Shown here piece by piece: positions 5,163 to 25,894 of a stretch of DNA of 64,000 bases. Where the stretch lies: positions 1-64,000 of IMG/VR virus record IMGVR_UViG_3300032770_000002, one strand, 5' to 3'. Made by a program: the position numbers and the translations under genes. How positions within the stretch are numbered: the stretch's first letter is position 1; each line of letters begins with the position of its first letter. The notes below the pieces were generated by a model that saw nothing but the letters and a program-made list of their open reading frames with translations, had not been told where the DNA came from and ran no database searches.

Positions 5163-5614
5163 GTGATTTTCCAGAGCTTCCAACACTTCGTCACATCACG
5201 TTAGGCGACTACAGCCTCAACGTCAGCCATTACCTGACGAAGGAATACGTTGACATCAGTGAAGCGGCGGCTGAGTTGCCGGCCATCATCGAGTGGATCA
5301 ATGAAAAACTCCAGGAGATGATTGAGTCGCGTGAACTGGCCAAGTGTGAACTGAAGCGACGTGAAGCTGCGGCCTTTTTTGACTTCCGCAAAAATGGCTT
5401 TGATGAAGACGAAGGCCTCTCTGGAAAGCCGACTGACAAGGCCGTTGAGTATGCCATCGAACTTCAAGAGAGTGTCAAAGAAGCCAACGAAAACCTTGCT
5501 GTTCTTGAAGGTTGGGTTTCACGATTAAAAAACCAACTCGAGACCTTCCGGGTCAAGTTCGACTTGATTCGATCAACTGAAGCTACACGACGAAAAGATT
5601 ACGAGACCACATGA
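5159..5614 (+). CDS. UvsY-like recombination mediator
   Basis: Coiled-coil 151 aa protein (KPTDKAVEYAI...LKNQLETFRVKFDLIRS) directly upstream of the SSB and RecA genes, with ATGA overlaps. Confidence 0.5.
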   Translation: MSDFPELPTLRHITLGDYSLNVSHYLTKEYVDISEAAAELPAIIEWINEKLQEMIESRELAKCELKRREAAAFFDFRKNGFDEDEGLSGKPTDKAVEYAIELQESVKEANENLAVLEGWVSRLKNQLETFRVKFDLIRSTEATRRKDYETT

Positions 5615-7014
5615 ATCCAGACTTCACTCCATCCCCAGAAATGATGGCCATGCTCGACGGCGAGCAGAAGGCAATCCAATCAAAACGACGTGGCTTTCGT
5701 CAGGTGAAAATTGAGGAGAACGACTCGTGGCTGATTCGTTATATTCCTTACACTTTCGGTCCCACGAACAAATTTTACCTCAAGGTCGCCAATCACTGGA
5801 TCTTTCGCAAGCCTTACTTTTGCCCACGTGAGACTGACCCTGAAGCTGGAGGCGACCCGAACTACGACTGTGAACTCTGTGCGACGTGCAATGACATGCG
5901 TGGAAGCCCAACGAGCGCCGTCAAGAACGCAGGGTTTAAGGGCTCAGCCACGCAGCAGTGGTTGATGTATTGCTTTGTCTACGAACGCGAGCTTGCAAAG
6001 CACCGTGGTGAGGTTGAGATTATCGAAGACCCCGAGGAACTGTGGACCCCATGGGAATATTGGCACAGCCAATGGGGGTTCGACGAATTCATCAGCATTT
6101 TTCGAAAGAATTACAACGACCGGCGCCACCCGTCGAATGTGCTTGACTTCATGACCGGGTCGAACTTCTGGGCCCGTGGCACTACGAAGGGCGTCAGTCT
6201 TCAGAAGCATGACTCTGGCCCAATCACCGAGGGCACGCCAGAGCAAATCCAGGAAATCATAAACTTCGCGTGGAGTAAAATTCGAGTTCCGACGCTGACA
6301 CCGCTCAACGATGAACAAACTCAGGCCGCGTTGATCAAGCTCGAGGAACTGGCCCGTGAAGCTCCCAAGCAAGACCCACGAGGTCGGCGCACCACGAATT
6401 TTAGGGAGCGGTCTTCCGATGATGACGCTGGAGACTTGGCGCCGCAACGTCCTCCGGCCGTCGCCAGGGCCCCACAAGTCAGCGCGCCACAGGTTAGCGC
6501 GCCACGTCAAGCACCTCCAGCTGTAACTCAAGCCCAAGTTGCTCCGCCTCGAGTTTCGGCCCCGAGTGCAGCTCCCACCGTTTCAGCTCCGCGAGTTTCT
6601 CCGCCAACTGTTGTCGTTCCAAAGGCGGCCAACATGCCGCCGTCGGTGTCAGCAACTCCACCAGCGCTTCCCACAGTTTCAGCTCCGGCACAAAATCAAC
6701 AGCCGTCACTCGGTGACCGACTGCGGGCGCGTCAGTCTCCAGCGCCAGCAGTTGGCGGCAACCCCAACGCGGCGTCAACCATCGACCCTACTGAGGACAA
6801 CGTCACTGATGAGCACCGTGACCCAGCTCCCCCGAACCCTAACGTTCAAGTCGATGACAACCCGCCTCCGCAAGTCTCGGCTGAGGGCATCGCCAATAAC
6901 GCTCAAGCCGCTCCAGTCGCGTCGCAGCCGCCGGCTGGTGCACCTTTAGTCGGTCGCACTAACCTGAGCTCCAAGCTGCGTGGGGCGATAGCCAACGCTT
7001 CGAACAGAAGGTGA
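5611..7014 (+). CDS. gp32-like single-stranded DNA-binding protein with long Pro/Ala-rich tail
   Basis: WLIRYIP...HW...YFCP...CELC Zn-binding core typical of phage gp32-like SSBs; lies next to RecA. Confidence 0.72.
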   Translation: MNPDFTPSPEMMAMLDGEQKAIQSKRRGFRQVKIEENDSWLIRYIPYTFGPTNKFYLKVANHWIFRKPYFCPRETDPEAGGDPNYDCELCATCNDMRGSPTSAVKNAGFKGSATQQWLMYCFVYERELAKHRGEVEIIEDPEELWTPWEYWHSQWGFDEFISIFRKNYNDRRHPSNVLDFMTGSNFWARGTTKGVSLQKHDSGPITEGTPEQIQEIINFAWSKIRVPTLTPLNDEQTQAALIKLEELAREAPKQDPRGRRTTNFRERSSDDDAGDLAPQRPPAVARAPQVSAPQVSAPRQAPPAVTQAQVAPPRVSAPSAAPTVSAPRVSPPTVVVPKAANMPPSVSATPPALPTVSAPAQNQQPSLGDRLRARQSPAPAVGGNPNAASTIDPTEDNVTDEHRDPAPPNPNVQVDDNPPPQVSAEGIANNAQAAPVASQPPAGAPLVGRTNLSSKLRGAIANASNRR

Positions 7015-7018
7015 TTGA

Positions 7019-8512
7019 ATGGCTCGCCGACGTGCGCAAAGCCCCGGTGCTGCACCCGCAGCTCCAAAGGGAAAGAAACTTGACCTGATTGGGCGTTGCA
7101 TCTCACGCATCCAGCGGTCATCCCCACGCAACTTTGAGAATGGCCAGATCCAGGTGATGCGAATGAATAGTTCACGGATGTTTTCATCCGTGAAACACGT
7201 CATTCGAAGCGGCCTTGACCCATTTGACGACATCGTCGGTCCGATCCCAATAGGCCGCGTCATGGAGGTCTACGGTCCCGAGGCCTCAGGAAAGACGGCC
7301 TTTGTCAAGAAGGTTTGCAAGCAAGCCTTCCTAAAGGACCTGTGGATTTACAACCCTGATGGCTCCCTGTCAAAGATCGAGGACGACACTGAAGTTGTCG
7401 TGTGCTATTTCGATAATGAGCACTCCATCGAGTCGTCAAACAACGAGATCATCATTGACGGCGTCAAGATTGATGGCATCCTGACGGAGTGTGACGTCAT
7501 TGAAGACCTGTGGAAGACCGTCGACAACGTCCTTGACGAGGTGAAGCTGTCGGCCAAGAATGAGGAAGAAAAACGCAAGAAGGCTGAAAAGGACGGCAAG
7601 ACTTACAAGCCAAAGAAATTCCTGACCGTCTTTATCGTTGACACTATTGCGTCAACGTCATCAATTGAGGAATACACCAAGGACTGGGGCGAGGAAGATT
7701 ATCCTCGCATGCCGAAAAAGCTCAAAGAGGGCTTTCGCCGAATGGTTCGCCGCATCGGCAACGAGAACGTCATCTTCATCGCCAGCAACCAGGCCAACGA
7801 GACGTTCGGCAACAAGAGCCGATACATTGCTCCTGACAAAAAGTTCAATTCACCCGGTGGCAAGGCGCTCAAATTCTTCGCCTCAACCCGAGTTCTTTTT
7901 GAACAGCTTCCAGTCAAGTTCGTTCTCGACGAGGAATACCAATTTCAACAGGGGTATGTCATCAGCTTTATCAGCACCAAAAACAGGTTAAAGAAGCCGC
8001 TTCGCGAAGGTCGGCTCATCCTGCTTTTTGACTCGGCCCCGAACATCTACGGTGACATAAGTCCGAGTGGGCTGAACAATGAATACTCGATTCTTGAAAC
8101 CCTGCTTTACCTGAAGTTCGTTCAATTTGAGGATGACAAGTTTCTTCGGTTCCACTTTCGGAAGTTCGAAATTCCGATGACGACGTTCAACGACCTCGAG
8201 GATGATGAGGACCCGCGAATGCCGAGTCGTGCCGATTGGGTGGCGTTCTACGCCGCTCATAAGGCTGACATTGACATGATGTGGAGAGCGGCCATCGACT
8301 ACATTCACAAGGACCGGTGCCTGACTAACGTCAGGGCCATTGAGGACAAGTCCACGGGCGAAGAGGAAGGTGAACAAAATGAAACTGGAAGTGACGGGTC
8401 GCCGGTTCAAAATGACACAGAACCAGCAACCTGTGAGAGTGTAAGTGACGCCCCAGCAATACCGTTGATTCCTCGAACGGGGGCTGTCTTGAGCATTCCA
8501 AATGAACCGTAA
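7019..8512 (+). CDS. recA: RecA/UvsX recombinase
   Basis: GRVMEVYGPEASGKT (Walker A), FIVDTIAS (Walker B), IASNQ, SPGGKALKFFASTRV. Confidence 0.93.
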   Translation: MARRRAQSPGAAPAAPKGKKLDLIGRCISRIQRSSPRNFENGQIQVMRMNSSRMFSSVKHVIRSGLDPFDDIVGPIPIGRVMEVYGPEASGKTAFVKKVCKQAFLKDLWIYNPDGSLSKIEDDTEVVVCYFDNEHSIESSNNEIIIDGVKIDGILTECDVIEDLWKTVDNVLDEVKLSAKNEEEKRKKAEKDGKTYKPKKFLTVFIVDTIASTSSIEEYTKDWGEEDYPRMPKKLKEGFRRMVRRIGNENVIFIASNQANETFGNKSRYIAPDKKFNSPGGKALKFFASTRVLFEQLPVKFVLDEEYQFQQGYVISFISTKNRLKKPLREGRLILLFDSAPNIYGDISPSGLNNEYSILETLLYLKFVQFEDDKFLRFHFRKFEIPMTTFNDLEDDEDPRMPSRADWVAFYAAHKADIDMMWRAAIDYIHKDRCLTNVRAIEDKSTGEEEGEQNETGSDGSPVQNDTEPATCESVSDAPAIPLIPRTGAVLSIPNEP

Positions 8513-8519
8513 AATTCTT

Positions 8520-8549
8520 GTTTACAACTTCATGAAAACAGGTTAGGGT
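8520..8549 (+). promoter_or_regulatory. Putative early (host sigma70-type) promoter
   Basis: GTTTAC-N18-TAGGGT; same class as five better copies elsewhere in the window. Confidence 0.45.
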
Positions 8550-8595: not shown

Positions 8596-9132
8596 ATGGA
8601 AGCAACAAAGAAAGACGAGTCCGCAGCGACTCCGACAGCTGCACCCGCCGTTGAGATGCCCAGCGCAGCGCGCGTCAAACGCGTTGAGCAGGTCCTTCGG
8701 TCGGACGCCACACTCAAGGAACGTCTCGGCAAGAAAGACGTCAACATCAAGGGCCGTGGAGGCACAACCGAACGTTTCACCCAAGAGGCCGTGTCGGTGA
8801 CTCAGGCCCTGCTCGAAGCCAAAAAGGAACCCTTCACCGTTCTCAAGAAGGACATCGTTCTTTGCGCCCAGAAGGTCCTCAACATCAACACCGAAGCCGT
8901 CGCCCAGGTTGCCGAACCTCCGCCTCCTCCGAACGACAACAACAAGTCCGAAAAGGGCAGCAAGCCGCAGAAGACCACGGTGGACCAGACCATCTCCATT
9001 GTCAGCCTTCTCCTTTCGGCCATCAACATCGCCAAATACTCTGACTCGCACTCCGGCGCCGACGCTCGACGCAAAAAGCTCGAGGAGATCAAGGAAGAGT
9101 ATGTGGCTGCGGCCAACATCAAGATCAGCTAA
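8596..9132 (+). CDS. Hypothetical protein
   Basis: 178 aa ORF with good codon pattern, flanked by a promoter-like motif and a hairpin element. Confidence 0.7.
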   Translation: MEATKKDESAATPTAAPAVEMPSAARVKRVEQVLRSDATLKERLGKKDVNIKGRGGTTERFTQEAVSVTQALLEAKKEPFTVLKKDIVLCAQKVLNINTEAVAQVAEPPPPPNDNNKSEKGSKPQKTTVDQTISIVSLLLSAINIAKYSDSHSGADARRKKLEEIKEEYVAAANIKIS

Positions 9133-9148
9133 GAAGTCGAAGTTCTAT

Positions 9149-9227
9149 ACACAGCGCACGTAAGTGCGTGCCCAACATCGACTGGGCGGAAGGCTCGAAC
9201 CAGAAGTTTAGGTTCGGCCTTTTGTGT
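9149..9227 (+). ncRNA. Structured intergenic element (four-way junction; last hairpin may be a terminator)
   Basis: P1 ACACAG/TTGTGT encloses CGCAC-GTAA-GTGCG, GCCCA-N8-TGGGC and AGGC(T)CGAACC-N9-GGTTCGGCCT. Confidence 0.4.
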
Positions 9228-9263
9228 TTATTAGACCCGTAGACTTCATTACAGTCTTGTGAC

Positions 9264-10355
9264 ATGGCAGCCACAGTAGAAGTTCTTGACGAGAATCAGC
9301 CGGGTGAAGTTGTCCCTGAGGGCCAACACATCTTCCATGCTGCGAAGCTGGAGCCCATGGCGAAGAAGTGGCAAGAGCTCAATGCCGAAGGCCAGGCTGG
9401 AAGCAGCGAAGCCGCGGCCGCCGCGATGCGGCTTCTCGAGCAGATCATCATCCTCTCCACGCCAATGTTTGAGCGGTTGGCGATGCATGAGGAATTTCAC
9501 CTCACAGTTCCACTTTCCCAGCTCACGTCAGCCGCCCAAGAAAAGGTCGTCATCTGGCTCCTACGTTGGGACCCCGAAAAAGGGCGGCTCTTTTCTTGGT
9601 TTTCAAAGTGCGCCAAGAACGCGTTTCGTGCCGAGATAACCAAGGAGATTGGGTTCCGCAACAAGATTCACACGACAGACGAAAGCCTTGAGAAGTGGCT
9701 TGGCAGCGAGGACCACGAAGTCGACAAGCACGACTCGGCCAGCGAAGTTAGGCAGCGACTGCGTCAGATTACGTGCCGATGGGGACACCCACAGGAGATT
9801 GGCACGATTCACTATTTGCTCGAGTGCATCATTGAGGACAATCACGTCAAGGAAGCCGCCATTGAAGGGGCGTCATTCGCGTGGGGACTGTCCGCGGACC
9901 ACGTGCGCTTTTTCTACACGTGGTGCCTTATCGCCTTGCGCAACGTCATGCGGGACAAGATCAGCATCCCGATGACTGAGCAGGACTTGATTTGCTGCAA
10001 ATACTCCTACACCTACCTTCCTGATTTTTTGACCATCATTCCTTGGGAACGGTCATGCCCCCATTGTCGCAGTGGCGGCCTGAAGGACCTCATTGCAATG
10101 TTCCATGGGATGCGAATTAAGTTTCCGACGGCTGAAGAAATTGTGCGGTTGAAGAAGGATTATCAGATCCACGAAGAGATCGGCCAAAGCGACCTCGACC
10201 CGGATTCAGTCAGCGCGATCGTTAAGAAGCACAAGCGGCCTGCCAAAAGCGCTGAACAGCTTTTTCGAGACATGGCGCAACTCCATGACCCGAAAATATC
10301 AGGTGAATACTTCATCTACGACGAACATGACGACGCCTATACTAACCAACAATGA
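9264..10355 (+). CDS. Phage sigma70-like transcription factor (region 2) with Mor-like C-terminal domain
   Basis: LTSAAQEKVVIWLLRWDPEKGRLFSWFSKCAKNAF resembles sigma region 2; C-terminal MFHGMRIKFPT...KKDYQIHEE resembles Mor. Confidence 0.62.
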   Translation: MAATVEVLDENQPGEVVPEGQHIFHAAKLEPMAKKWQELNAEGQAGSSEAAAAAMRLLEQIIILSTPMFERLAMHEEFHLTVPLSQLTSAAQEKVVIWLLRWDPEKGRLFSWFSKCAKNAFRAEITKEIGFRNKIHTTDESLEKWLGSEDHEVDKHDSASEVRQRLRQITCRWGHPQEIGTIHYLLECIIEDNHVKEAAIEGASFAWGLSADHVRFFYTWCLIALRNVMRDKISIPMTEQDLICCKYSYTYLPDFLTIIPWERSCPHCRSGGLKDLIAMFHGMRIKFPTAEEIVRLKKDYQIHEEIGQSDLDPDSVSAIVKKHKRPAKSAEQLFRDMAQLHDPKISGEYFIYDEHDDAYTNQQ

Positions 10356-11853
10356 ACTAACCCTAGACTCCATCTTAACGCCGCCGATTGACCAGTTGTT
10401 TCGTGTGTCAAGAGGACCGTTAAGTCACTTGCCACAGAAGTTCGAAGACGTCAAAGACGACCTCGAACACCTGATGCAGAAGCTGGCCCACACCTACACG
10501 GACTTGTCCTGTGTTCACCTTCACACCGACGAACTGGTTGGTTCACAGTGGGAAAAATTCAGCGTTCTTTGGGATCGTGGCTATTTTGAAAAGTGCAGAA
10601 CCCGGCTGGACTTCTTTCGCCGGGCCAAGACGTGCCTCAGCAACCACGTCAAGGGTCAAGTGCAGAAATATCGTGGCACGGCCAAGCGCACCGGGATGCG
10701 TCCACCGCCTCGCGGCACTGTTCCCACTAAGCCTGAAGACTTTGTTTCGACCAAGCGCGTGGAGGTCAGTCTGGACGACCCGGAAAGCAACTGTCAACCG
10801 CCTTGTGAAAGCGAGCCCGTGTCAGGCGACGGACCGGACGGCGAGTTCGACGAGTTTCGAAGTTACCTGACCCCAATTGAACAGCTGGTTTACAACACGC
10901 TTCAGCCTCCGGCCGTTGGCAGTCAGCTTGAAAACGAGGCTCGTCAGCGAATGACCACGCTGGCCACGTTGAAGGCCGAACGTGGGGCGGATAAGAATCG
11001 AAAATTCGAGGTCAAGTTGACCAATGAAACTTTGGCTGAAGGCGTCGGCCTTGACCAAGAATGGTTTAAAAAGATCGAGCAGTCTATTCGACGGAAATAC
11101 GAAGACTTTAAGCGTATGGACAACGACCCGGAACTTCACCAGCAGGAGATGGAATATAACCAGGCCTTGGCTTCACTGAGCGAGGCTTTTGGCGTTCAAG
11201 TGCCGCGGTCACTAAGCAAGATCGTTGCACGCCGCGCCATGCTTCTTGCCGCCCGTCGAAACTACGACAAGCTCGAAACCAGCCCAGAGCTGAGAGAGTG
11301 CCTGGTCAAGGTGGGCCTCAAGGTCCCAAGCTACAACGGACTTTCACTTGACTGCTTTGGCGTCCTTCACGACGCCACCGACAAAACCTGTCGCCTCTGC
11401 GGGCAGCGTGAAGCCTGTCGCGTGGAGTCGGCGACTCTTGGGCTTGACGCCGTCGTCCTGCACCCATCGGTGCTGGGTGTGAAGCAGATTCGCATTCCGA
11501 CGCTTATCGTCAACGAGCAGCCGCAGCTTCCTGTGGCGAACGACCGCAATGACGGCATTCTCTCCTACCTCAACGAGACGTTCGCAAGGTCAATCATCAA
11601 CCAGGACACCTATTTTCGTCACCGCGAATCGTTCGGCGCTCAGCGTCCACCACAGATCTTTTGCGTGATGACGAGTCAACCCAGCGAGCACATTCGCCTG
11701 CGTTTTTGCAACCCGTCAGAGGAGCTCAAGTCCTTGTTGGACAAGCGTCGCAACGGGTGGTATCTCCCGGACACGGCGAGTGTTGAGGAAGGGATCGAAT
11801 TGATTGAGCGCCACTCGAGCGAGGTGATTCGAAAGGTCGAAACGGAGGGCTAA
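10327..11853 (+). CDS. Second divergent sigma-like factor with Cys4 motif
   Basis: Region 2-like LMQKLAHTY...DELVGSQWEKF...TCLSNHVK; region 4-like LTPIEQLVY...TNETLAEGVGLD; CFG-x9-CxxC-x5-C motif. Start uncertain (10285 or 10327). Confidence 0.4.
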   Translation: MTTPILTNNELTLDSILTPPIDQLFRVSRGPLSHLPQKFEDVKDDLEHLMQKLAHTYTDLSCVHLHTDELVGSQWEKFSVLWDRGYFEKCRTRLDFFRRAKTCLSNHVKGQVQKYRGTAKRTGMRPPPRGTVPTKPEDFVSTKRVEVSLDDPESNCQPPCESEPVSGDGPDGEFDEFRSYLTPIEQLVYNTLQPPAVGSQLENEARQRMTTLATLKAERGADKNRKFEVKLTNETLAEGVGLDQEWFKKIEQSIRRKYEDFKRMDNDPELHQQEMEYNQALASLSEAFGVQVPRSLSKIVARRAMLLAARRNYDKLETSPELRECLVKVGLKVPSYNGLSLDCFGVLHDATDKTCRLCGQREACRVESATLGLDAVVLHPSVLGVKQIRIPTLIVNEQPQLPVANDRNDGILSYLNETFARSIINQDTYFRHRESFGAQRPPQIFCVMTSQPSEHIRLRFCNPSEELKSLLDKRRNGWYLPDTASVEEGIELIERHSSEVIRKVETEG

Positions 11854-15497: not shown

Positions 15498-15552
15498 AAT
15501 TACCAGGCAACGGTTTGTTGATCTTCAACGCTCCAGGGTGGAGTTTTAACCT

Positions 15553-17388
15553 GTGCCCGAACCGCTAGTGGCTTTTCTGGACTGTGTAGTCAACGTGGGC
15601 GACAAAAAGCTGTTGCTTGAAGATACAGTCGGCGAATTCGTCGTTTCCAGCGGTCCGCAGCGGATTACTGAGAGCGAAGTCAATGGCCGAAAATTCATTC
15701 ACATTTCCGGGCGTTTATCACTTTGTGACACGCTAAACGGGAACAACCGCATCTACCCGCGAAAGGTATGGGAGCGGCAGTTCCAGCCGGACTCCAAACT
15801 GATGAAGCTGATTGAGCGTAATCGCTCTGTCGGCCTGCTCGAACACCCCAAGGACGGTCAAGTCACCCTCAACTCTCCAATTTCCCACCTTCTCGTCAGT
15901 GCAAAGCTCAATGAGGATGGAACCGTTCAAGGCGAACTGCGTCTCATCAACACGCCCGAAGGCCAAAAGCTAAGGGCCCTCATTGAAGCTGGTTACAACC
16001 CGCTTGTTTCAAGCCGTGGTTACGGTTCCCTCGAAAAGGACACTGAAGGCCACGACGTCGTCCAAGAGGACTACGTCTGTGAGGGTTGGGACGCCGTCTT
16101 CCACCCGTCATTTACGCAATGCGAGCTTGAAGCGGCAGGCGCCGTTGAGAGCACTGGCCAGCTACGTTCTGGTCGACGTCTCGGTGAGTCAACGCCTGGC
16201 GTCAACATGTGGTGCGTCTACCAGGCGTTAAGCGAGCGTGACTATGGGCGAACTTGGATGGCTCTCAGTGAGAGTGAGCGAGACGCCGTCGCCCAAAAGG
16301 CAAACTTACTTCCGCAGGACGAGAAAGTTCGTCTCGAGTCTGAGTTTAACGCGAAGCGGGTGGCCAAGATCACCATGGCCGAAAACAGGGAAAACAGGGT
16401 GATCAAGGAGAATCAAGGAATTTCGGGTCAGGCGACGCCGCCGAAACCCGCGCCTACTGGGGCGGCGCCTCAAGTCCCCTCAACCAACGAAAATCATATG
16501 GACGCGATTCGTCAAAAGTTACTCACAATCGCGGCTTTGAACCCGAAGTCGATGACGCCGACGCAACTCAGCGAAAGCCGAAATCAGCTTCGTGGACTCC
16601 ACAACGACGTGGCCAAGTGGCAAGCTGAAGATCAGACTCGTTCCTACGAGGCTGGCCAGATCCACAAGTCCATCGAGGAAGTTGAGTCGAAGTTCGACGA
16701 AGCCATCACTGGACCGAGGGCTGAAAGCGCGCGGTTATTGACCGAACGCCAGAAAACCCTGTCGGTGCTCAGTGCTACGGTCGATGCCGCGAAGACCATC
16801 AAAAAGCACCTCACCGAAGCCATTAGCAAGAATGGCAAGCTTGCTTCGGTGAACGCCAAGCTGCTCGAAGCCGTTCGTGCCTGGAAACAGGAAGCCGAGC
16901 ATTTTCAAGCCCTCGCAGCCCTTTACGAGGACAAGTATAACCTTTCGTGCGACACCCTCGACGTCATGTCGGATCGGTGGAAGTCAAATACCACTGAGCT
17001 GGGACGGCGCGTTGTTGAGCTCGAATTTGCCGAGGCGGTGAAGAACCCCGAGGTGAAGAAGAAGCTCGACGAAGCGAAACACCCGGATGATGTCGCCGAC
17101 GTGCGCGAATCCCTGTTGCCGAAGAACGGCACGGGCCAGGTCGTTGAAAATCAGGGCCAACCGCAGGGCAAGCCTCAAGGTCAGCCGGCACAAGCCGCTC
17201 CTCAGGGCCAACCCCAGCCGTTGAACGAGGCCCAGCGCTCAACGTCTAACGCGACGGCACAATCGCAGGGCGGACTGAAGCAGCCAACGGTCGTCCAACA
17301 CACGCGGCATCCCGGCACGCTCAAAGAGAGCATTGCCATTGCTCGTCGGTTGTCAGGAAGGCCAGTCGAAGCCGCCGCGGCTGCGTAA
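15553..17388 (+). CDS. Prohead protease (T4 gp21-like) fused to coiled-coil scaffold
   Basis: NGNNRIYP, GLLEHP, ISH, NTPEGQKLRALI, VSSRGYGSL, WDAVFHPS; long coiled-coil C-terminal half. Confidence 0.9.
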   Translation: MPEPLVAFLDCVVNVGDKKLLLEDTVGEFVVSSGPQRITESEVNGRKFIHISGRLSLCDTLNGNNRIYPRKVWERQFQPDSKLMKLIERNRSVGLLEHPKDGQVTLNSPISHLLVSAKLNEDGTVQGELRLINTPEGQKLRALIEAGYNPLVSSRGYGSLEKDTEGHDVVQEDYVCEGWDAVFHPSFTQCELEAAGAVESTGQLRSGRRLGESTPGVNMWCVYQALSERDYGRTWMALSESERDAVAQKANLLPQDEKVRLESEFNAKRVAKITMAENRENRVIKENQGISGQATPPKPAPTGAAPQVPSTNENHMDAIRQKLLTIAALNPKSMTPTQLSESRNQLRGLHNDVAKWQAEDQTRSYEAGQIHKSIEEVESKFDEAITGPRAESARLLTERQKTLSVLSATVDAAKTIKKHLTEAISKNGKLASVNAKLLEAVRAWKQEAEHFQALAALYEDKYNLSCDTLDVMSDRWKSNTTELGRRVVELEFAEAVKNPEVKKKLDEAKHPDDVADVRESLLPKNGTGQVVENQGQPQGKPQGQPAQAAPQGQPQPLNEAQRSTSNATAQSQGGLKQPTVVQHTRHPGTLKESIAIARRLSGRPVEAAAAA

Positions 17389-17421
17389 CCAAACAACAAC
17401 GATCAACTAAGGAAAACACAT

Positions 17422-18873
17422 ATGGTTATCCTGTCAATGGAAGGCCGCCCGGAATTGGTTTCAGACGGGGGCCAAGCATGTAACACGACCGAAATCTATG
17501 AGTGGGGTGCACACCTCGCCAGGACGCCGGTCGGTGTTGAAGAAGGCGACCCGAAAGGGTTGTGGAAGGCGAAAGGTTGGAAAGACCTGGTCGAGCACAT
17601 GGCGCCTGAAAAGCAGGCGTATGCGGCCGTCCTTCTCGAGAACGCGCGACGCAAGTTCGGGCGCCTCGACGAAGTGACCCGCACCCAGAACCTGGGCACG
17701 TTCGACAAGTGGATCTTCCCGATCATCGCGAACATGTCCGAAAACGACGTCATCGACCAGCTCGTCTCGGTTCAACCGATGGCCGGCCCAGTGTCGCAGA
17801 TCGTCTACATGGACATCGTGACTGACCGTCGGAAAGGTCGCATTCCTCAGGGTGCTCCAATGTGGCGCGCCACTCAGGGTGCTTCTGACCGTGACGGTGA
17901 CTCGGACGAACTGATTCAGGACGAGCCGGGCAACATGGCGTCGAACAAGATCACGTGCGACTGGACGCCACTGCGGCCTGGAACGATCGTCGTGACAGTC
18001 GGCTCTGACACCGTTCAGGACGATGGCAACGGTTTGCTTGGCGCGTCCGGGTCTATCGTCAGCGGCTCAGTCGATTACGCGACTGGCGTCATCACTGTGA
18101 CGGGGCCTGGAGCGTCTGACGCTTACACGGTGACCTACCAGTATAACTCGGAAGGCAACCAGAGCGTGATGGGTTACGAGATGAAGCTCACCTCGACCCC
18201 CGTGACCGCGAAGGTCATGAAGCTCAAGGCCGTCTGGTCCGAGGAAGCCGACCAAAACCTGCAGAGCATGTATAACATCGGCGCCGAGCCGACGATCGTG
18301 AACTCCATCACGAATGCGCTGCAATACCAAAAACACCGCCAGGTCATCTTCGACCTTCGCGCGCGAGCCGATGCTGGTTTCGTTGTCTGGGACGCTGTGC
18401 CTCCCTCGAACACGAACTACCAGACCCACAAGTTCAGCTTCAACGACGCTGTGCAGACGGCATCGATGTTCATCTTCGGCGCTACCAACCAGGCGACAGG
18501 CAATTGGCTCCTGCTTGGCTTGCAGCCGACGACGGTCGTTGTCACCCTGCCTCAGTTCGTTGCCCGTGCCAACCGCGTGGAAATGCAGGGCATCACCTAC
18601 ATCGGCGACTTGGCCGACAAGAAGGTGTTCGCCGACCCGCACTATCCGAATAACGAGTGGATGGTGGGATTCCGCGGGCGCCAGTTCGTCCAGACTGGCT
18701 TTGTCCTGGCCGAGTATCAAAAGCTCTACACTACGCCGGACATCATGCTCCCGGACTTCTTGCACCAGCGCGGTTTTGCGACCTCGTTTGCCAAGAAGAT
18801 GGTGAACAGCAAGATGTTCTGCCGCGGTATGGAGATCAACGCTCCGACCAACTTCACTGGCGCAATCGGCTAA
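17422..18873 (+). CDS. Major capsid protein (T4 gp23-like)
   Basis: LVSVQPMAGPVSQIVYM and VTAKVMKLKAVWSEEADQNL; follows the protease gene; AAGGA RBS; strong terminator downstream. Confidence 0.93.
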   Translation: MVILSMEGRPELVSDGGQACNTTEIYEWGAHLARTPVGVEEGDPKGLWKAKGWKDLVEHMAPEKQAYAAVLLENARRKFGRLDEVTRTQNLGTFDKWIFPIIANMSENDVIDQLVSVQPMAGPVSQIVYMDIVTDRRKGRIPQGAPMWRATQGASDRDGDSDELIQDEPGNMASNKITCDWTPLRPGTIVVTVGSDTVQDDGNGLLGASGSIVSGSVDYATGVITVTGPGASDAYTVTYQYNSEGNQSVMGYEMKLTSTPVTAKVMKLKAVWSEEADQNLQSMYNIGAEPTIVNSITNALQYQKHRQVIFDLRARADAGFVVWDAVPPSNTNYQTHKFSFNDAVQTASMFIFGATNQATGNWLLLGLQPTTVVVTLPQFVARANRVEMQGITYIGDLADKKVFADPHYPNNEWMVGFRGRQFVQTGFVLAEYQKLYTTPDIMLPDFLHQRGFATSFAKKMVNSKMFCRGMEINAPTNFTGAIG

Positions 18874-19270: not shown

Positions 19271-19825
19271 ATGTCCTGGGACCGGGCAACGCGCCACATT
19301 CTTGACAACCACCTAAATGGCAAGCACAACAAGTTTATGCAACTGCCTGCTCCAATTCCATCGCCAGCTCCATTGCCGGCTCCATTACCAGAGTCTAGAG
19401 TGTCGCTCAAAAAACTTAAGCGGGTCGAGTCATTTTCTGAATTGACGTCTCGTCAATTTGACGTCGCCTTGCTAATCGTTCTCGGATTGACGAACAAGCA
19501 CATGTCGTTCTTGCTTGGAATTACGGTTAAGACGATTGAAAAACACCGCACGGACGTCTTTCAACTGCTTGGTTGTCACAACGTGTTTGAACTTCTGCGT
19601 GTGGCGCTCAAGAAGAATCTCCTGACTTTGGAAGAGTGGCTTGAGTGCCCGCACGAGATTGAGGCCTACTCAACCTACGCAAAACAGATTCTTTTAAAGA
19701 AACGTCATGGCAGAATTCAACCTGCGGAAGATAACGATCCGAAACTGGACGACAATTCAGGAAGCGGAGGTGGAATTCCCACCGAAGGGGCTGATCTTTC
19801 TTCTGGGAAACAACTTGGCATCTGA
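19271..19825 (+). CDS. Solo LuxR/NarL-type HTH transcription regulator
   Basis: LTSRQFDVALLIVLGLTNKHMSFLLGITVKTIEKHRTDVFQLLGCHNVFELLRVAL. Confidence 0.85.
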   Translation: MSWDRATRHILDNHLNGKHNKFMQLPAPIPSPAPLPAPLPESRVSLKKLKRVESFSELTSRQFDVALLIVLGLTNKHMSFLLGITVKTIEKHRTDVFQLLGCHNVFELLRVALKKNLLTLEEWLECPHEIEAYSTYAKQILLKKRHGRIQPAEDNDPKLDDNSGSGGGIPTEGADLSSGKQLGI

Positions 19826-21635
19826 AGGCCACCTCGACGGGTCTGGAGCGGGAAAAACGAATTTTGGAACGGCCATCTCACGGGCCGTTCTTGGGGTGCC
19901 GGACAAACTGGCTTCAAAACTCAGCAGGCACAAGCGAGGCAACACGTATGTCAGGGTGGCCGGCGATCTTCGTGGCGAGGACTTTGTCATCGAAACTGGC
20001 TACAAGTGCCAGGAATTGAGCAAAACTGGCGAAGGACTGCGCTTCCAGGTTGGCTCCGGTGAGCCGATCAGCCGTTCACACGTAAGCCTGACAAAAGAAG
20101 AGCTGACCCGGGTCATTGGAGTCGTTCCAGAGCTGGCCCGGTGGGTCACGTTCATCAACGGTGACAAACTCCAGTTTGATGAGCTTTCACAGCGTGACGC
20201 CGTCGAGCTCCTCATGGTCGCGCTTCGCCAGCCGCGGTGGTCGGCTGTCTCGAAGAGAAGCCGCAAAGTCTTGGACGTCATCAGCGAGGAGATGTCATTG
20301 AACGAGACTCGGGTTGCTGACACTCGAAGGGCGATTGCCGCGTGTGAAACGGCCATCGTCTCACTGAGCAGAAGCCGAGTCGACGCCCAAGTCGCTTACG
20401 ACAAGTCGCTCGCTGAACAGGTTGAAAGGTTAAAAAAGGAAAGTGACGACCTGCAAAAGCTGACGGAAGAGCTGGCCAAGATCGAGACGCGTCAAGCGGC
20501 CATCAGTAAGGAAATTGAACGCATCACCAAGGAAAAGGCCGAAAGCTACGCCGCGCTTGAAAACAAGCGCCTTGAGCTGGACGGGCAGTTGAAGATGGCC
20601 AGGGAGCCGATTCGAGGCCTCATTCAAGACTACACGCGAAAACAGGACTCCAAGGCCGCGGCGTGGAAATCGCTCCACAAGCCAGAGACGTGTCCGACGT
20701 GTGGACAACCGTGGACCTTGGACCATGAGCACAAGGCTCGACTAACCGAGTCCCTTGAACGCGCTCAGATGGAAGAGCTTGAGAGCAAGCAAAAGCTTGA
20801 GGCAGCTCAACTTCAGGTGTCGAAGCTTCAAGGTGAATTTGATGCTGTCTGTGAAAGCTTGAGCCAGCTTAACGTCAAAAATTCAACGGTCAAGCTGAGT
20901 GTCGAACACCGGAAACTTGGCGAGCAAGGTGACTCCATCACGAGGGACGTCCGCCAGATTGAGTTGACGATTGAGCGTCTTAGCCGTGGGCCGGACAAGA
21001 GTGGCATTGTCAAGGCGGAGACCGAACTTGCCGCAAAGGAGAACCAACTTCAGGAGTTAGGCTCAACCCTGGTAAAACTTGAAAAAGACCTCACGGACGG
21101 GCGCTCCTCGGTTGGAGTCATCAACTACTGGATCAACGCGTTCGACCCAAAGGGCATCATGAACATGCTCTTGCGTGAGGCGATTGGCCCGCTCAACGCC
21201 GTGACCAAGCGGGTCTCCCAGGTCATGGTTGGCGGCATGATCGAGGTGACATTCGACACGCGGCATGAACTTCAATCGGGTGAAGAGCGCGACGAGTTGG
21301 TCGTCAACGTAAAGGCTGTTGAGGGCGCCGACGAGTTGGACATGACGAGCAAGGGCGAGAGCAGCTTAGCCAACTTGATCATCAGTGAAGCCTTAGCTGA
21401 GATTAGCCAGGTTCATGGCTTGGTCAATTTTGTGTGGTTCGATGAAGTGACTAAGAATTTTCCAGCTCACGTGCGTTCAGTCTTCTACCAATATCTCAAG
21501 GACAAGGCCAACAGGCTTGACCAGCTCATCTTTATCGTTGACCACAGTGACGAGGTGATGAATTACGCTGACTATGTTCTCCTGGCAGAGAAGACTGTCA
21601 CGAAAGGGACCACGTTAAAATGGATCAACCGATAG
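19707..21635 (+). CDS. sbcC: SbcC/Rad50-like (T4 gp46) recombination ATPase
   Basis: GSGAGKT, CPTC zinc hook, SKGE signature, FVWFDEV Walker B, IVDH. Confidence 0.92.
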   Translation: MAEFNLRKITIRNWTTIQEAEVEFPPKGLIFLLGNNLASEGHLDGSGAGKTNFGTAISRAVLGVPDKLASKLSRHKRGNTYVRVAGDLRGEDFVIETGYKCQELSKTGEGLRFQVGSGEPISRSHVSLTKEELTRVIGVVPELARWVTFINGDKLQFDELSQRDAVELLMVALRQPRWSAVSKRSRKVLDVISEEMSLNETRVADTRRAIAACETAIVSLSRSRVDAQVAYDKSLAEQVERLKKESDDLQKLTEELAKIETRQAAISKEIERITKEKAESYAALENKRLELDGQLKMAREPIRGLIQDYTRKQDSKAAAWKSLHKPETCPTCGQPWTLDHEHKARLTESLERAQMEELESKQKLEAAQLQVSKLQGEFDAVCESLSQLNVKNSTVKLSVEHRKLGEQGDSITRDVRQIELTIERLSRGPDKSGIVKAETELAAKENQLQELGSTLVKLEKDLTDGRSSVGVINYWINAFDPKGIMNMLLREAIGPLNAVTKRVSQVMVGGMIEVTFDTRHELQSGEERDELVVNVKAVEGADELDMTSKGESSLANLIISEALAEISQVHGLVNFVWFDEVTKNFPAHVRSVFYQYLKDKANRLDQLIFIVDHSDEVMNYADYVLLAEKTVTKGTTLKWINR

Positions 21636-24414: not shown

Positions 24415-24743
24415 GTTTCGTAGAAGTTTCTCACGAGCTTGCAGACTTCCTCATGCATTGACTCGGCCTGTTCGATGGATCCGATGCACCGATTTTGGAA
24501 CGCGCTGAGTCGTTCATCGCCAAAGACCATCGTCTCCCAAAGTGGGCCCGGCGTAAACGTGATGTTGATCGGAAGTATAACCGTGCTGACTTCAGCCCGA
24601 TTGATGCGGTCTTTTTTAAGGACCACTCGCTTGGCCCATTCACCCCTTGACGACGAGCTAAAAACCCTGCTGAGCTCCTCAACGTTTGTCGCGCAAGCAG
24701 GTTTTCGGTCGTCGTCGATATACCAATATTCGAGCTCTATCAC
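24411..24743 (-). CDS. Conserved phage hypothetical protein
   Basis: EVSTVILP...LWETMVFG...QAESMHEEV pattern. Confidence 0.6.
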   Translation of the reverse strand: MIELEYWYIDDDRKPACATNVEELSRVFSSSSRGEWAKRVVLKKDRINRAEVSTVILPINITFTPGPLWETMVFGDERLSAFQNRCIGSIEQAESMHEEVCKLVRNFYET

Positions 24744-25894
24744 TCTTCTCCTACGGATTCAACCGTGACACGGCCACCTCGCTTGAGAGCTTGGTTGCCG
24801 ATCAGGTTGTCATGTTTGGCTTGATTGACCTTAAGAATCTCGGTTCGGACGTGCGCGGTGGTCACTTTCCACCTGGAGCGTTCGATGCCGATGCACGCCG
24901 CGTCGATGGAGTTGAAGCATACGTTCTGGATGTCACCACCAGACAGGCCACTTGAAGCTTGCGCGGCCTCGATGAGGTCAACTTCAACTCGGCCATTCGC
25001 TGGCGGCAGGTGCAGTGAGAAAATGGCCTTGCGCATGTCAAGGTCCGGCAGGTCAAACTTGACGTAGCGGCTGACACGGCGCATGAACGCCTCGTCAAAA
25101 TGATTCAGCAGGTTCGTTGCCATCAGCACGGGCCCGTCATAGGCGTCAAGTGTTTGGATGAAGACATTCTTGTCGGCGTTAAGCCGTTGGGCCGTGGCTG
25201 ACGGCCAGAATGTCCTGGCGGCGCACAGTGAGTCGGCTTCATCGAGGAAGAGGATGGCGTTGTAGCGCTTGGCCCTGGCGAAAATGGCCTTTCGGCTTTC
25301 AGACCCTTGAACTTGGCCGTAGTCGACTTGGTAGAGGAGTTTGCCGAGTTTTTCGGCGATGGCGTGGATTGTGATGGTCTTGCCAGTTCCAGGCGGCCCG
25401 TAGAAACAGTAGACTGACCTGCGAACTGGGCAAATGGCTGTCAGGTTGAAGGCTTCGTCGATCTCCTTGCGCAACTTGATTGAGGCCACCGTCGCGTCGA
25501 CCTCTCCCTGGGCGCTGGGGTCTAGCACCACCCGCGAAAAGCTATTTTTTGGGCGCACAAGGTCACCAGGCCCGGCGTTGCAGTCCTGAAAAATTTCGGC
25601 GAGTTTCGATTCTGACTCAGAGCTGTTGGCCGCGGCGATGACGCTGTCAATGAGCGTCATGTCAACACACCCGTCATTGTCGTATGGGTAGGTTTCAAAT
25701 TCGACGATGAACCGGTCAATGATCAAGGCCTTGTCGTCAGGGATGGCTGTAAACCTTCGTCGGAAGTTCACAAGTGAAAGCTTGAACCGCGAGCCACCGT
25801 TTCCGACGGCTCGGTAGTGGACGGTGTCGTTGTCACGCTCAAGCACCTCGTAAGGCCTGTGCGAGTTGTTGTGGCTGTAATATCGATTTGGCAT
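24740..25894 (-). CDS. AAA+ ATPase
   Basis: FYGPPGTGKT, ILFLDEADSL, MATN...FDEAFMRR (SRH). Confidence 0.92.
   Translation of the reverse strand: MPNRYYSHNNSHRPYEVLERDNDTVHYRAVGNGGSRFKLSLVNFRRRFTAIPDDKALIIDRFIVEFETYPYDNDGCVDMTLIDSVIAAANSSESESKLAEIFQDCNAGPGDLVRPKNSFSRVVLDPSAQGEVDATVASIKLRKEIDEAFNLTAICPVRRSVYCFYGPPGTGKTITIHAIAEKLGKLLYQVDYGQVQGSESRKAIFARAKRYNAILFLDEADSLCAARTFWPSATAQRLNADKNVFIQTLDAYDGPVLMATNLLNHFDEAFMRRVSRYVKFDLPDLDMRKAIFSLHLPPANGRVEVDLIEAAQASSGLSGGDIQNVCFNSIDAACIGIERSRWKVTTAHVRTEILKVNQAKHDNLIGNQALKRGGRVTVESVGEE

What the first reader, a model, noticed from the sequence alone, without database searches (positions are those of the whole stretch)
9264..10355. Sigma region 2 fused to a Mor-like activator domain
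Seen: the N-half has a sigma70 region-2 pattern (WDPEKGRLFSWF..CAKNAF), but no standard region 4. Instead the C-terminus reads DLIAMFHGMRIKFPTAEEIVRLKKDYQIHEEI...VSAIVKKH after a CPHC motif. Known: Mu Mor/C proteins have an FGG-x-IY-x-P...RN/D-xx-I...LA.KY pattern, and T4 gp55 lacks region 4 and needs gp33. Inference: a self-contained sigma plus activator fusion that recognises a phage-specific promoter class.
Basis: inference. Interest (0 to 1): 0.6.

Follow-up and report, generated by a model that had tools for sequence, protein, structure and literature searches.

The report
Phage sigma factor fused to Mor
An uncultured 230-kb wetland phage encodes a T4 gp55-like RNA polymerase sigma factor whose tail end is a complete Mor/C-type activator module, a domain combination that is conserved in hundreds of related phages and that I did not find described in the papers I searched.

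Summary
The ORF at 9264-10355 (+, 363 aa) is real. It has at least 239 homologues, many of them on 200-255 kb phage contigs.

**N-terminal half.** Residues 25-135 fold as sigma region 2. The region through residue 236 superposes on T4 gp55 (Z 10.7, 125 of 137 residues). The gp55 PHROG and Pfam Sigma70_r2 match weakly.

**C-terminal part.** Residues 237-345 are homologous to Mor/C-family activators:
- Pfam Mor hits 24 of 60 family members.
- A profile of this domain alone retrieves stand-alone 113-157 aa proteins. All six that I scanned match Pfam Mor, and one aligns by hhalign at E 1.7e-10.
- The model matches the solved Mu C and Mor structures.
- The domain is predicted to homodimerise through the Mor-type beta-strand (0.64 against 0.00 for controls).
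- No Pfam sigma region 4 match was found.

The CPHC motif, however, sits in an insertion found only in the closest relatives.

**Not shown:** that the protein works without partners, or which promoters it reads. I found no promoter class for it. A second sigma-like gene with regions 2 and 4 lies directly downstream.

**Also seen:**
- Inteins split many homologues exactly between K115 and C116 of region 2.
- GTAC is absent from the whole genome.
- About 30 sigma-70-type promoter sites, probably early promoters.

The parts
9264..10355 (+). Gene for the sigma-Mor fusion protein (P0001, 363 aa plus stop)
   Evidence: ORF and translation. 239 homologues at E<=0.01, the 120 best listed being 294-484 aa. 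Conserved synteny in L006-L008.
9336..9668 (+). Sigma region-2 homology domain (residues 25-135), with the motif QEKVV..W..W.P.KG.LFSWFSKCAKNAF
   Evidence: VIA matches: 4x8k_A Z 10.2 rmsd 2.2, 2o7g_B Z 9.9, and T4 gp55 7d7d_F Z 10.7. phrog_234 E 0.006, or 1.9e-4 against the genome. Pfam Sigma70_r2 in 11/60 members. Column identity 0.76.
9606..9611 (+). K115|C116 junction inside region 2. Homologues carry a mini-intein or a LAGLIDADG intein exactly here; this gene has none.
   Evidence: P0177 and P0169 align to P0001 up to ..FSWFSK and resume at CAKNAF. Pfam Intein_splicing and LAGLIDADG_2 lie in the inserts. C116 is invariant.
9669..9725 (+). Conserved acidic linker (residues 136-154), predicted disordered, net charge -6
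   Evidence: pLDDT below 50 for residues 136-153, yet column identity is 0.77. Its role as a sigma-finger or linker equivalent is inferred.
9726..9971 (+). Middle helical domain (residues 155-236). Its first helices align with the helix-loop-helix of gp55. Its relation to sigma regions 3/4 is unresolved.
   Evidence: The gp55 superposition spans model residues 23-236. gp55 is described as a sigma-R2 domain plus an HLH in PMC7892883. 3mzy_A Z 5.8 over residues 153-236.
9972..10298 (+). Mor/C-family module (residues 237-345): dimerisation-like helices 237-279, beta-strand linker 280-290 (HGMRIKFPT here, GGxRxKIPT in the family), and HTH 291-342
   Evidence: Pfam Mor matches 24/60 members; P0104 scores 26.6 bits against a cut-off of 24.9. 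Mu C 9l0x_G Z 6.9 and Mor 1rr7_A Z 5.9 with 87 of 94 residues aligned. An Atlas cluster of 134-aa viral proteins carrying Pfam Mor matches. The domain profile retrieves stand-alone proteins that match Pfam Mor. hhalign against P0247 gives E 1.7e-10.
10045..10074 (+). Insertion holding the CPHC motif (residues 262-271), found only in the closest relatives and P0027. It is a shortened form of the longer Cys/His cluster in several of them.
   Evidence: Alignment A1, columns about 311-328: present in P0001, P0004, P0006, P0009 and P0027, absent in the others shown.
10290..10352 (+). Conserved C-terminal tail (residues 343-363): DP-x-R-x-G-E-[YHF]-x-[IVL]-[YF] followed by acidic residues
   Evidence: P343 is at least 90% conserved; G347 and E348 are invariant. 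Tails are listed. It resembles the T4 gp55 clamp-binding end SLDFLYEAND. Its function is inferred only.
9133..9263 (+). Structured intergenic leader upstream of the gene, with a terminator-like hairpin followed by a U-rich tract
   Evidence: MFE -49.3 kcal/mol, z -5.07, 0 of 200 shuffles fold as well. L008 has different sequence at the same place, and by eye it also has hairpins followed by T tracts. The simple terminator scan did not flag this region.
8513..8549 (+). Copy of the genome's sigma-70-like promoter class (TTGTTTACA, 17-nt spacer, weak -10 TAGGGT) upstream of ORF 8596-9132. This is the nearest promoter-like site upstream of the sigma gene.
   Evidence: Genome-wide class listed; local sequence.
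10327..11853 (+). Neighbouring gene P0123/P0002 (508 aa): a second sigma-like protein with regions 2 and 4, a Cys cluster and a YjbR-like C-terminal domain. It overlaps the end of the sigma-Mor gene by 29 nt.
   Evidence: Gene call of 508 aa. AF2 model pLDDT 68. VIA: sigma-2 over residues 32-117 at Z 7-8; sigma-4 over 166-266 (3vep_D Z 7.2 rmsd 2.2, 2h27_D Z 6.0); YjbR 2fki Z 8.6 over 406-508. It lies next to the fusion gene in L006-L008.

Best explanation
The gene encodes a phage promoter-specificity (sigma) factor of the T4 gp55 type that has a Mor/C-family activator module fused to its C-terminus.

Shown here:
- The N-terminal half is a sigma region-2 domain plus a gp55-like helical extension.
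- The C-terminal 110 residues are homologous to stand-alone Mor proteins. They include the Mor dimerisation helices, the beta-strand linker and the HTH.

Inferred mechanism:
- The region-2 domain docks on the beta-prime clamp helices of the host RNA polymerase core and reads a -10-like element, as gp55 does.
- The conserved acidic linker and the middle helices take the path of the gp55 HLH or the sigma linker.
- The Mor-like module binds duplex DNA upstream of the -10-like element. It probably does so as a dimer, formed with a second copy through the Mor-type beta-strand and helices, on a dyad-like site.
- The module may also touch the beta flap or the alpha-CTD, as Mor and C do.

On this reading, upstream anchoring is built into the sigma polypeptide. 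In T4 that anchoring is supplied by gp33 plus the gp45 sliding clamp, and in Mu by a separate activator working with host sigma-70.

The gene sits behind a structured, terminator-like leader and a sigma-70-like promoter. This fits expression after the earliest genes and a role in switching to middle or late transcription.
For: Context and family:
- The genome is a complete 230,253-bp phage with a distant T4-type core: UvsX, a gp21-like protease and a gp23-like capsid protein.
- The family has 239 clusters at 90% identity, many on 200-255 kb contigs.
- A 22%-identical relative, P0225, keeps the whole architecture (hhalign prob 99.6, E 1.4e-24 over 315 columns).

Sigma part:
- VIA Z 10.7 to T4 gp55, with 125 of 137 residues aligned; Z 8-10 to many sigma-2 domains.
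- The top Foldseek PDB and BFVD hits are sigma factors.
- phrog_234, the family that T4 gp55 matches at 2.9e-69, matches only this ORF in the genome.
- A manual register anchored on the shared N-A-F motif puts gp55 pocket residues H95/Y97/T99 (PMC7892883) opposite the conserved F110/W112/S114.
- Inteins home into this motif in many homologues. This fits a conserved, important site.

Mor part:
- Pfam Mor in 24/60 members and no region-4 hit.
- The domain profile finds stand-alone proteins; six of six tested match Pfam Mor, two above the cut-off.
- hhalign against one of them gives E 1.7e-10, prob 96.9.
- Structural matches to Mu C and Mor and to an Atlas cluster of Mor-like proteins.
- Homodimer prediction: ipSAE 0.64 against a best control of 0.00. 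The runs agree in at least 79% of their contacts, and partner pLDDT is at least 69. The calibration mark was reached by 20 of 30 proteins solved as pairs and 1 of 23 solved as single chains. The interface covers residues 237-300, including self-pairing of the beta strand.

Other:
- No gp45-type or beta clamp was detected in the genome.
Against: - There is no biochemical evidence of any kind.
- P0001 itself has no Pfam hit. The Sigma70_r2 hits in relatives are all below the cut-off.
- hhalign of the family against the single T4 gp55 sequence is not significant (E 0.32).
- I could not find a recurrent promoter class that this protein might read.
- The dimer pass may reflect the model's memory of the solved Mor structures. 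A dimeric sigma has no precedent that I know of.
- The adjacent sigma-like gene with a region 4 could be a required partner.
- Negative clamp searches with T4 and bacterial models do not exclude a divergent clamp.
- The host is unknown.
Confidence: 0.6

Rival explanations
1. Two-component sigma. The fusion protein works only together with the conserved downstream sigma-like protein P0123. P0123 would supply the region-4/beta-flap contact, as gp33 does for gp55, while the Mor-like module adds upstream DNA contacts.
For: The two genes are adjacent and overlapping here, and P0123-like genes lie directly downstream in L006-L008. P0123 has sigma-4-like residues 166-266. P0001 lacks any Pfam region 4.
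Against: P0123 has its own region-2 domain (and weakly), so it looks like a complete sigma in its own right. No interaction was tested. Neighbouring genes alone are weak evidence.
Confidence: 0.15
2. Ordinary small sigma factor. The C-terminal HTH is simply a diverged region 4 that binds the beta flap and a -35 element, and the likeness to Mor reflects only shared HTH ancestry.
For: Full-length Foldseek and VIA alignments to sigma-B, sigma-32, AlgU, BldN and sigma-28 run through to about residue 350. The nearest named Atlas cluster for residues 237-363 is a viral region-4 protein, but at a score of 0.79, which is a lead only.
Against: No Pfam region-4 hit in 60 members, against 24 Mor hits. 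The profile search finds Mor proteins. The match includes Mor's N-terminal helices and the GG..IP beta linker, which sigma region 4 lacks. A Mor-type dimer is predicted.
Confidence: 0.1
3. Sigma mimic or host-takeover factor. The region-2-like domain occupies the sigma site on core polymerase to displace host sigma. Alternatively, the protein is a Mor-type activator that merely tethers itself to the polymerase. Neither version involves reading a -10 element.
For: No cognate promoter class was found. Phages do encode proteins that bind polymerase at sigma sites (general knowledge).
Against: The residues that line the gp55 base pockets have conserved counterparts (F110, W112, S114). Region 2.3/2.4 is the most conserved part of the protein.
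Confidence: 0.1

Closest known systems
T4 gp55, the late sigma factor (phrog_234; PDB 7d7d chain F)
   Same: Both have a sigma region-2 homology domain followed by a short helical (HLH) element and no Pfam region 4. Both are encoded by a phage with a T4-type head and recombination core. Both end in a hydrophobic-acidic tail. The structural match is Z 10.7 over 125 of 137 residues.
   Different: This protein is twice as long. It carries a conserved acidic linker, a larger middle domain and a whole Mor-family module. No gp45 clamp was detected in the genome, and no TATAAATA motif occurs in it. Sequence similarity is marginal: PHROG E 0.006, and hhalign against T4 gp55 alone is not significant.
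Mu Mor and C (Pfam PF08765; PDB 1rr7, 9l0x)
   Same: The module shares the dimerisation helices, the conserved beta-strand linker (GG-x-x-x-x-IP) and the C-terminal HTH. A homodimer through the beta strands and helices is predicted. Profile-level homology to stand-alone proteins that match Pfam Mor is established.
   Different: Mor and C are free 129-140 aa proteins that activate host sigma-70 holoenzyme from dyad sites upstream of the -35 element. According to bioRxiv 10.1101/2025.05.02.651988 they act as tetramers. Here the module is covalently joined to a sigma-like protein, carries an extra tail, and has no known DNA site.
ECF (group 4) and small phage sigma factors
   Same: The region-2 fold and motifs are shared (FxxWFxxxAxN). 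A disordered linker follows region 2, and an HTH lies at the C-terminus. Many BFVD and Atlas neighbours are phage sigma factors.
   Different: The C-terminal HTH belongs to the Mor family, not to region 4. An additional 80-residue helical domain is present. All Pfam sigma models score below their cut-offs.

Membership tests
Sigma-70 family | Region 2 domain (fold and the 2.1-2.4 motifs) | tested here: met
   VIA Z 8-10 at rmsd 2.2-2.6 A to solved sigma-2 domains. The conserved motifs are visible in alignment A1.
Sigma-70 family | Pfam Sigma70_r2 match above the gathering score | tested here: not met
   P0001 has no hit. The best relative scores 20.2 bits against a cut-off of 24; 11 of 60 members hit at E<=0.1.
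Sigma-70 family | Region 4 HTH that binds the beta flap and the -35 element | tested here: inconclusive
   No Pfam region-4 hit in 60 members. Both the middle domain and the C-terminal HTH can be superposed on sigma-4 in different full-length alignments.
Sigma-70 family | Binds RNA polymerase core and confers promoter specificity | not testable with these tools
   This needs biochemistry.
T4 gp55 late sigma (phrog_234) | Profile match to the family | tested here: inconclusive
   E 0.006 by hmmscan, and 1.9e-4 in the genome search, covering profile positions 71-147 of 181. hhalign against T4 gp55 alone gives E 0.32.
T4 gp55 late sigma (phrog_234) | Sigma-R2 domain plus HLH architecture | tested here: met
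   7d7d_F Z 10.7, rmsd 3.8, 125 of 137 residues aligned, model residues 23-236.
T4 gp55 late sigma (phrog_234) | Works with a gp45 sliding clamp through a C-terminal clamp-binding motif, and with gp33 | tested here: inconclusive
   The tail resembles SLDFLYEAND. No gp45 was found with PF02916, PF09116 or phrog_223, and no beta clamp with PF00712. gp33 was not searched.
T4 gp55 late sigma (phrog_234) | TATAAATA-type late promoters in the genome | tested here: not met
   TATAAATA occurs 0 times in 230 kb.
Mor/C family (PF08765) | Pfam Mor match above the gathering score | tested here: inconclusive
   P0001 itself has no hit. 24 of 60 relatives hit at E<=0.1. P0104 scores 26.6 bits against 24.9, over profile positions 21-95 of 107.
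Mor/C family (PF08765) | Homology to bona fide stand-alone Mor proteins | tested here: met
   The profile of residues 237-363 finds 113-157 aa proteins at a library-wide E<=1e-3. Six of six tested have Pfam Mor as their best match; two are above the cut-off. hhalign against P0247: prob 96.9, E 1.7e-10.
Mor/C family (PF08765) | N-terminal dimerisation domain, conserved beta-strand linker and C-terminal HTH | tested here: met
   Mor 1rr7_A has 87 of 94 residues aligned, and Mu C has 93 aligned. GGxRxKIPT is conserved, with invariant G, R and P. The family definition is taken from bioRxiv 10.1101/2025.05.02.651988.
Mor/C family (PF08765) | Forms dimers | tested here: met
   This is a prediction only. 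ipSAE 0.64 against a best control of 0.00. The mark was reached by 20 of 30 proteins solved as pairs and 1 of 23 solved as single chains. Contact agreement is at least 79% and pLDDT at least 69. The pass may reflect memory of the solved Mor structures.
Mor/C family (PF08765) | Small free-standing activator of host sigma-70 holoenzyme that binds a dyad upstream of the -35 element | tested here: not met
   The module is the C-terminal third of a 363-aa sigma-like protein. No binding site was identified.

The most novel reading that the evidence does not exclude
The fusion is a new way of building a promoter-recognition factor. A gp55-type sigma carries its own dimeric, class-I-activator-type DNA-binding module. 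On this reading, one polypeptide (as a dimer) reads both a -10-like element and an upstream dyad. It thereby replaces both the gp33/gp45 sliding-clamp system of T4 and the separate Mor/C activators of Mu. A dimeric sigma could even bridge two polymerases or two promoters.
Probability: 0.3. Interest if true: 0.75.

Novelty: new variant of a known kind. Interest (0 to 1): 0.62.

Why it matters
Sigma factors and transcription activators are normally separate proteins. T4 late transcription and Mu middle and late transcription are the textbook cases of how phages add upstream anchoring to a polymerase with a weak or absent -35 contact.

A widespread phage family that fuses a gp55-like sigma to a Mor module would link these two paradigms. 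It would also give a compact, testable system for asking how upstream DNA contacts can substitute for region 4 or for a sliding clamp.

The frequent inteins at one fixed site in region 2 mark that site as a conserved position in an important gene. They also offer natural split points for protein engineering.

Tried and rejected
**Promoter hunt (inconclusive)**
- k-mer enrichment in intergenic and upstream DNA found only the sigma-70-like class TTGTTTACAAA-N11-12-TGTGGTATATT.
- A home-made EM motif search gave no robust second motif.
- TAGTTA turned out, in the three junctions I checked, to be a TAG stop codon followed by TTA just before the next gene's start.
- CGTAG[TA] is about 2.7-fold enriched within 60 nt upstream of starts, 21 sites against about 8 expected. 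It has no extended consensus, so it is a lead only.
- TATAAATA is absent.
- A conserved dyad block upstream of the head protease gene is essentially single-copy: 0-2 matches to its core pattern per relative genome, and only one that matches the block.
- TGTAGACA is over-represented in four of five relatives. The G005 sites show no shared flanking motif and read like ordinary genic sequence; ORFs were not called there.

**Sequence searches that gave nothing**
- tblastn of P0001 against 50,697 phage records: no match. The N-terminal half alone gave only E 2-8 hits, one of them a Sinorhizobium phage late sigma.
- The family profile against PDB sequences found only a chance hit.
- hhalign of the family against single sequences: Mu Mor E 0.016 in the expected register, Mu C E 0.25, T4 gp55 E 0.32.
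- A word-based search with the C-terminal domain alignment found only family fragments.
- BLASTP of P0001 against P0002 found nothing. Profile against profile gave E 0.009 in the region-2 register.

**Clamp searches**
- PF02916, PF09116, phrog_223 and PF00712 were all negative.
- The phrog_168 hit at 24740-25894 is a generic AAA ATPase, not a clamp loader.
- phrog_12791 was negative.

**Taxonomy**
- Cluster look-ups gave no names or host.
Full report
**Context.** The window is the first 64 kb of a complete 230,253-bp virus record with direct terminal repeats. The only sequencing run found to hold it is a wetland metagenome. The genome has a distant T4-type core:
- UvsX-like recombinase at 7019-8512
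- gp21-like prohead protease at 15553-17388
- gp23-like capsid protein at 17422-18873
- tail sheath at 40057-42720
- SbcC- and SbcD-like nuclease subunits at 19707-21635 and 58885-59958, primase at 56363-57373, and a weak portal match at 61398-63329

The capsid protein is at most about 30% identical to that of any phage record in the collection searched. The lineage is therefore not represented among those phage records.

**The observation.** It is a real, conserved gene. A word-based search found 239 clusters at E<=0.01; the 120 listed are mostly 330-365 aa, and many lie on contigs of 200-255 kb. The gene order is kept in three relatives that are 50-73% identical: glycosyltransferase, two ORFs without family matches, UvsX, in the two more distant relatives a small metallopeptidase-like gene, one more small ORF, this gene, then a gene of about 510 aa. 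Sixty members align over their whole length with 56% mean column identity.

**N-terminal half.** P0001 alone hits no Pfam or NCBIfam model. It does hit phrog_234, 'late sigma transcription factor', at E 0.006. It is the only place in the genome that hits this family (E 1.9e-4). T4 gp55 matches phrog_234 at 2.9e-69.

An AF2 model built on the alignment has mean pLDDT 82. Its matches are:
- T4 gp55 in the gp45-dependent activation complex: 7d7d_F, Z 10.7, rmsd 3.8, 125 of 137 residues, model residues 23-236.
- Many solved sigma-2 domains at Z 8-10 and rmsd 2.2-2.6 A over residues 25-129.
- Foldseek's best PDB and BFVD hits are all sigma factors.

According to PMC7892883, gp55 is a sigma-R2 homology domain plus a helix-loop-helix, with a C-terminal clamp-binding motif on a linker. 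A manual register anchored on the shared N-A-F motif places gp55 pocket residues H95, Y97 and T99 opposite F110, W112 and S114. F110 is invariant and the other two are at least 90% conserved. That register is an inference from the sequences, not a tool result.

After region 2 comes a segment (136-154) that is predicted disordered and acidic, yet is as conserved as region 2 itself. A four-helix domain follows (155-236). Its relation to sigma regions 3 and 4 I could not settle.

**C-terminal part.** Pfam Mor (PF08765) hits 24 of the 60 relatives. The best, P0104, scores 26.6 bits against a cut-off of 24.9, over profile positions 21-95 of 107. No region-4 model hits any member.

Structural matches for residues 235-343:
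- Mu C (9l0x_G, Z 6.9, 93 residues aligned)
- Mu Mor (1rr7_A, Z 5.9, 87 of 94 residues aligned)
- an ESM Atlas cluster of 134-aa viral proteins, 14% of whose members carry Pfam Mor (TM 0.55 by the target)

Following the operators' advice I searched the domain apart. An HMM of residues 237-363 from the 60 members, run against 1.84 billion representatives, found 86 proteins at E<=1e-3. Besides family members, these include stand-alone proteins of 113-157 aa. All six that I scanned have Pfam Mor as their best match, and two are above the cut-off. One of them, P0247, aligns to the domain profile with hhalign probability 96.9 and E 1.7e-10 over 88 columns. Those columns cover the N-terminal helices, the GG..I.IP strand and the HTH.

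The defining anatomy of the Mor/C family is a dimerisation domain, a conserved beta-strand linker and a C-terminal DNA-binding domain (bioRxiv 10.1101/2025.05.02.651988). All three parts are present here.

A homodimer test of the domain passed:
- ipSAE 0.64 against 0.00 for the best of three controls.
- The runs agree in at least 79% of their contacts, and pLDDT is at least 69.
- The calibration mark was reached by 20 of 30 proteins solved as pairs and by 1 of 23 solved as single chains.
- The interface is residues 237-300, with the beta strand pairing with its twin.

This pass may reflect the model's memory of the solved Mor structures. It shows likeness to Mor, not binding.

**The CPHC motif.** The motif lies in an insertion that only the closest relatives and one other member (P0027) have. 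Several of those relatives carry a longer CxxC...C form. Most of the family has no insertion at all. It is not part of the conserved design.

**How widespread the fusion is.** P0225 (385 aa) is only 22% identical, but aligns with the family profile over 315 columns spanning both halves (prob 99.6, E 1.4e-24). The fusion is therefore older than the immediate clade.

**How it probably works.**
- Shown: the domain composition, its conservation, and a phage context with a T4-like core.
- Inferred: region 2 binds the beta-prime clamp helices and reads a -10-like element, as gp55 does. The Mor-like module, probably as a dimer, binds duplex DNA upstream and may contact the beta flap or the alpha-CTD, as Mor and C do. 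Upstream anchoring would then be built into the sigma.
- Consistent with this: no gp45-type clamp or beta clamp is detectable in the genome. That is weak negative evidence.
- A caution: the extreme C-terminus, after invariant G347 and E348, is conserved as aromatic, any residue, hydrophobic, aromatic, then acidic residues. This recalls the gp55 clamp-binding end SLDFLYEAND. A link to an unrecognised clamp cannot be excluded.

**What I could not show.** I found no promoter class for this protein.

The only recurrent intergenic motif has about 30 copies, TTGTTTACAAA-N11-12-TGTGGTATATT. It reads as a strong sigma-70-type promoter: TTTACA, a 17-nt spacer, TATATT, an extended -10 and an A/T-rich upstream tract. 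These are most simply early promoters read by the host's primary sigma.

One weak copy lies at 8513-8549, upstream of ORF 8596-9132. Between that ORF and the sigma gene lies a 131-nt spacer that folds far better than shuffled controls (z -5.07) and has a terminator-like hairpin. A relative has different sequence at the same place, and by eye it also has hairpins followed by T tracts. This suggests that expression of the sigma gene is gated. That is an inference.

All other motif leads failed or stayed weak; they are listed under Tried and rejected.

**The neighbour.** The next gene (10327-11853, 508 aa) overlaps the sigma gene's end. It evolves faster (about 33% identity among relatives). Its model (pLDDT 68) matches:
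- sigma-2 domains over residues 32-117 (Z 7-8)
- sigma-4 domains over residues 166-266 (3vep_D Z 7.2 rmsd 2.2; sigma-E region 4 on DNA, 2h27_D, Z 6.0)
- YjbR/DUF419 proteins over residues 406-508 (Z 8.6)

The phage thus carries two tandem sigma-like genes. They may serve different temporal classes, or they may act together. I did not test an interaction between them.

**Comparison with what is known.** The protein works most like T4 gp55 in its front half and like Mu Mor/C in its back half. It fails the formal Pfam thresholds for both families when scanned on its own. Family-level profiles, reciprocal searches and structure all support homology to both. I found no description of a sigma-Mor fusion in four full-text searches. 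The jumbo-phage survey PMC7824862 has no whole-word match to 'Mor' or 'gp55' in its text. The library searched is incomplete, so this is not proof of novelty.

**Verdict.** The domain interpretation is supported, and the functional inference is plausible but untested. I rate this a new variant of a known kind, with interest 0.62.

Noticed in passing
window 10327-11853 (+): The gene directly downstream encodes a second sigma-like protein. It has a region-2 domain, a region-4 domain, an invariant Cys cluster (C343, C355, C358, C364) and a YjbR/DUF419-like C-terminal domain. It lies next to the fusion gene in the three relatives examined (L006-L008).
   Followed up: partly
window 9606-9611 (K115|C116 of P0001); homologues P0008, P0169, P0177, P0214 and others: Many homologues are 488-538 aa or about 700-780 aa. 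In the three scanned this is because of an insert: a mini-intein in one, and a LAGLIDADG-endonuclease insert, presumably an intein, in two. In the two aligned to P0001 the insert sits exactly between FSWFSK and CAKNAF of sigma region 2. The +1 Cys is invariant even in alleles without an intein. About 20 of the 86 representatives found have these lengths.
   Followed up: partly
whole genome G000 (230,253 bp), window included: The tetranucleotide GTAC does not occur at all, against about 888 copies expected from base composition. This is a complete avoidance that suggests pressure from a GTAC-specific restriction system. TTATAA, TATATA, CTATAG and TAGCTA are also strongly depleted.
   Followed up: partly
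G000, about 30 sites; in the window at 8519(+), 18936(+), 27802(-), 32397(-), 37840(-), 45368(-), 50034(+): A highly uniform sigma-70-type promoter class: AAAATTTTGTTTACAAA, then 11-12 nt, then TGTGGTATATT. It is mostly intergenic and clusters at 79-102 kb and 129-227 kb. These are probably early promoters read by the host's primary sigma.
   Followed up: partly
window 15512-15545; relatives L011-L036, upstream of the prohead protease gene: A conserved block of about 28 nt with a dyad lies upstream of the head protease-capsid operon. In relatives it reads TTGATTGA..TTCAATCGTCTTAGGTGCG; here it is TTTGTTGATCTTCAACGCTCCAGGGTGGAG. It is essentially single-copy per genome, so it is a gene-specific control element rather than a promoter class. 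It is a possible target for a dimeric HTH protein.
   Followed up: partly
window 9133-9263: The intergenic spacer upstream of the sigma gene folds unusually well (MFE -49.3, z -5.07). It contains a hairpin followed by a U-rich tract. The primary sequence is not conserved in a 73%-identical relative, which by eye has other hairpins with T tracts at the same place.
   Followed up: partly
G000; e.g. window 31233(-), 40035(+), 53632(-), 60704(+): TAGTTA(G/A) is strongly concentrated 4-20 nt before start codons: 13 of its 23 genome copies. In the three cases I checked, the TAG is the stop codon of the preceding gene. The gene junctions therefore share a fixed stop context of unknown meaning.
   Followed up: no
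window 17389-17421, and the same place in L009-L036: The leader of the major capsid gene is A/C-rich (for example AACAAACAAAAAAC before the ATG). Most of the 18 sequences examined show no Shine-Dalgarno-like GGAG. This may hint at the host's mode of translation initiation.
   Followed up: no
window 5611-7014 (+): A conserved 467-aa ORF upstream of UvsX has a Cys-rich N-terminal part and a long Pro/Ala/Val/Gln-rich repetitive tail. It has no Pfam or PHROG match.
   Followed up: no
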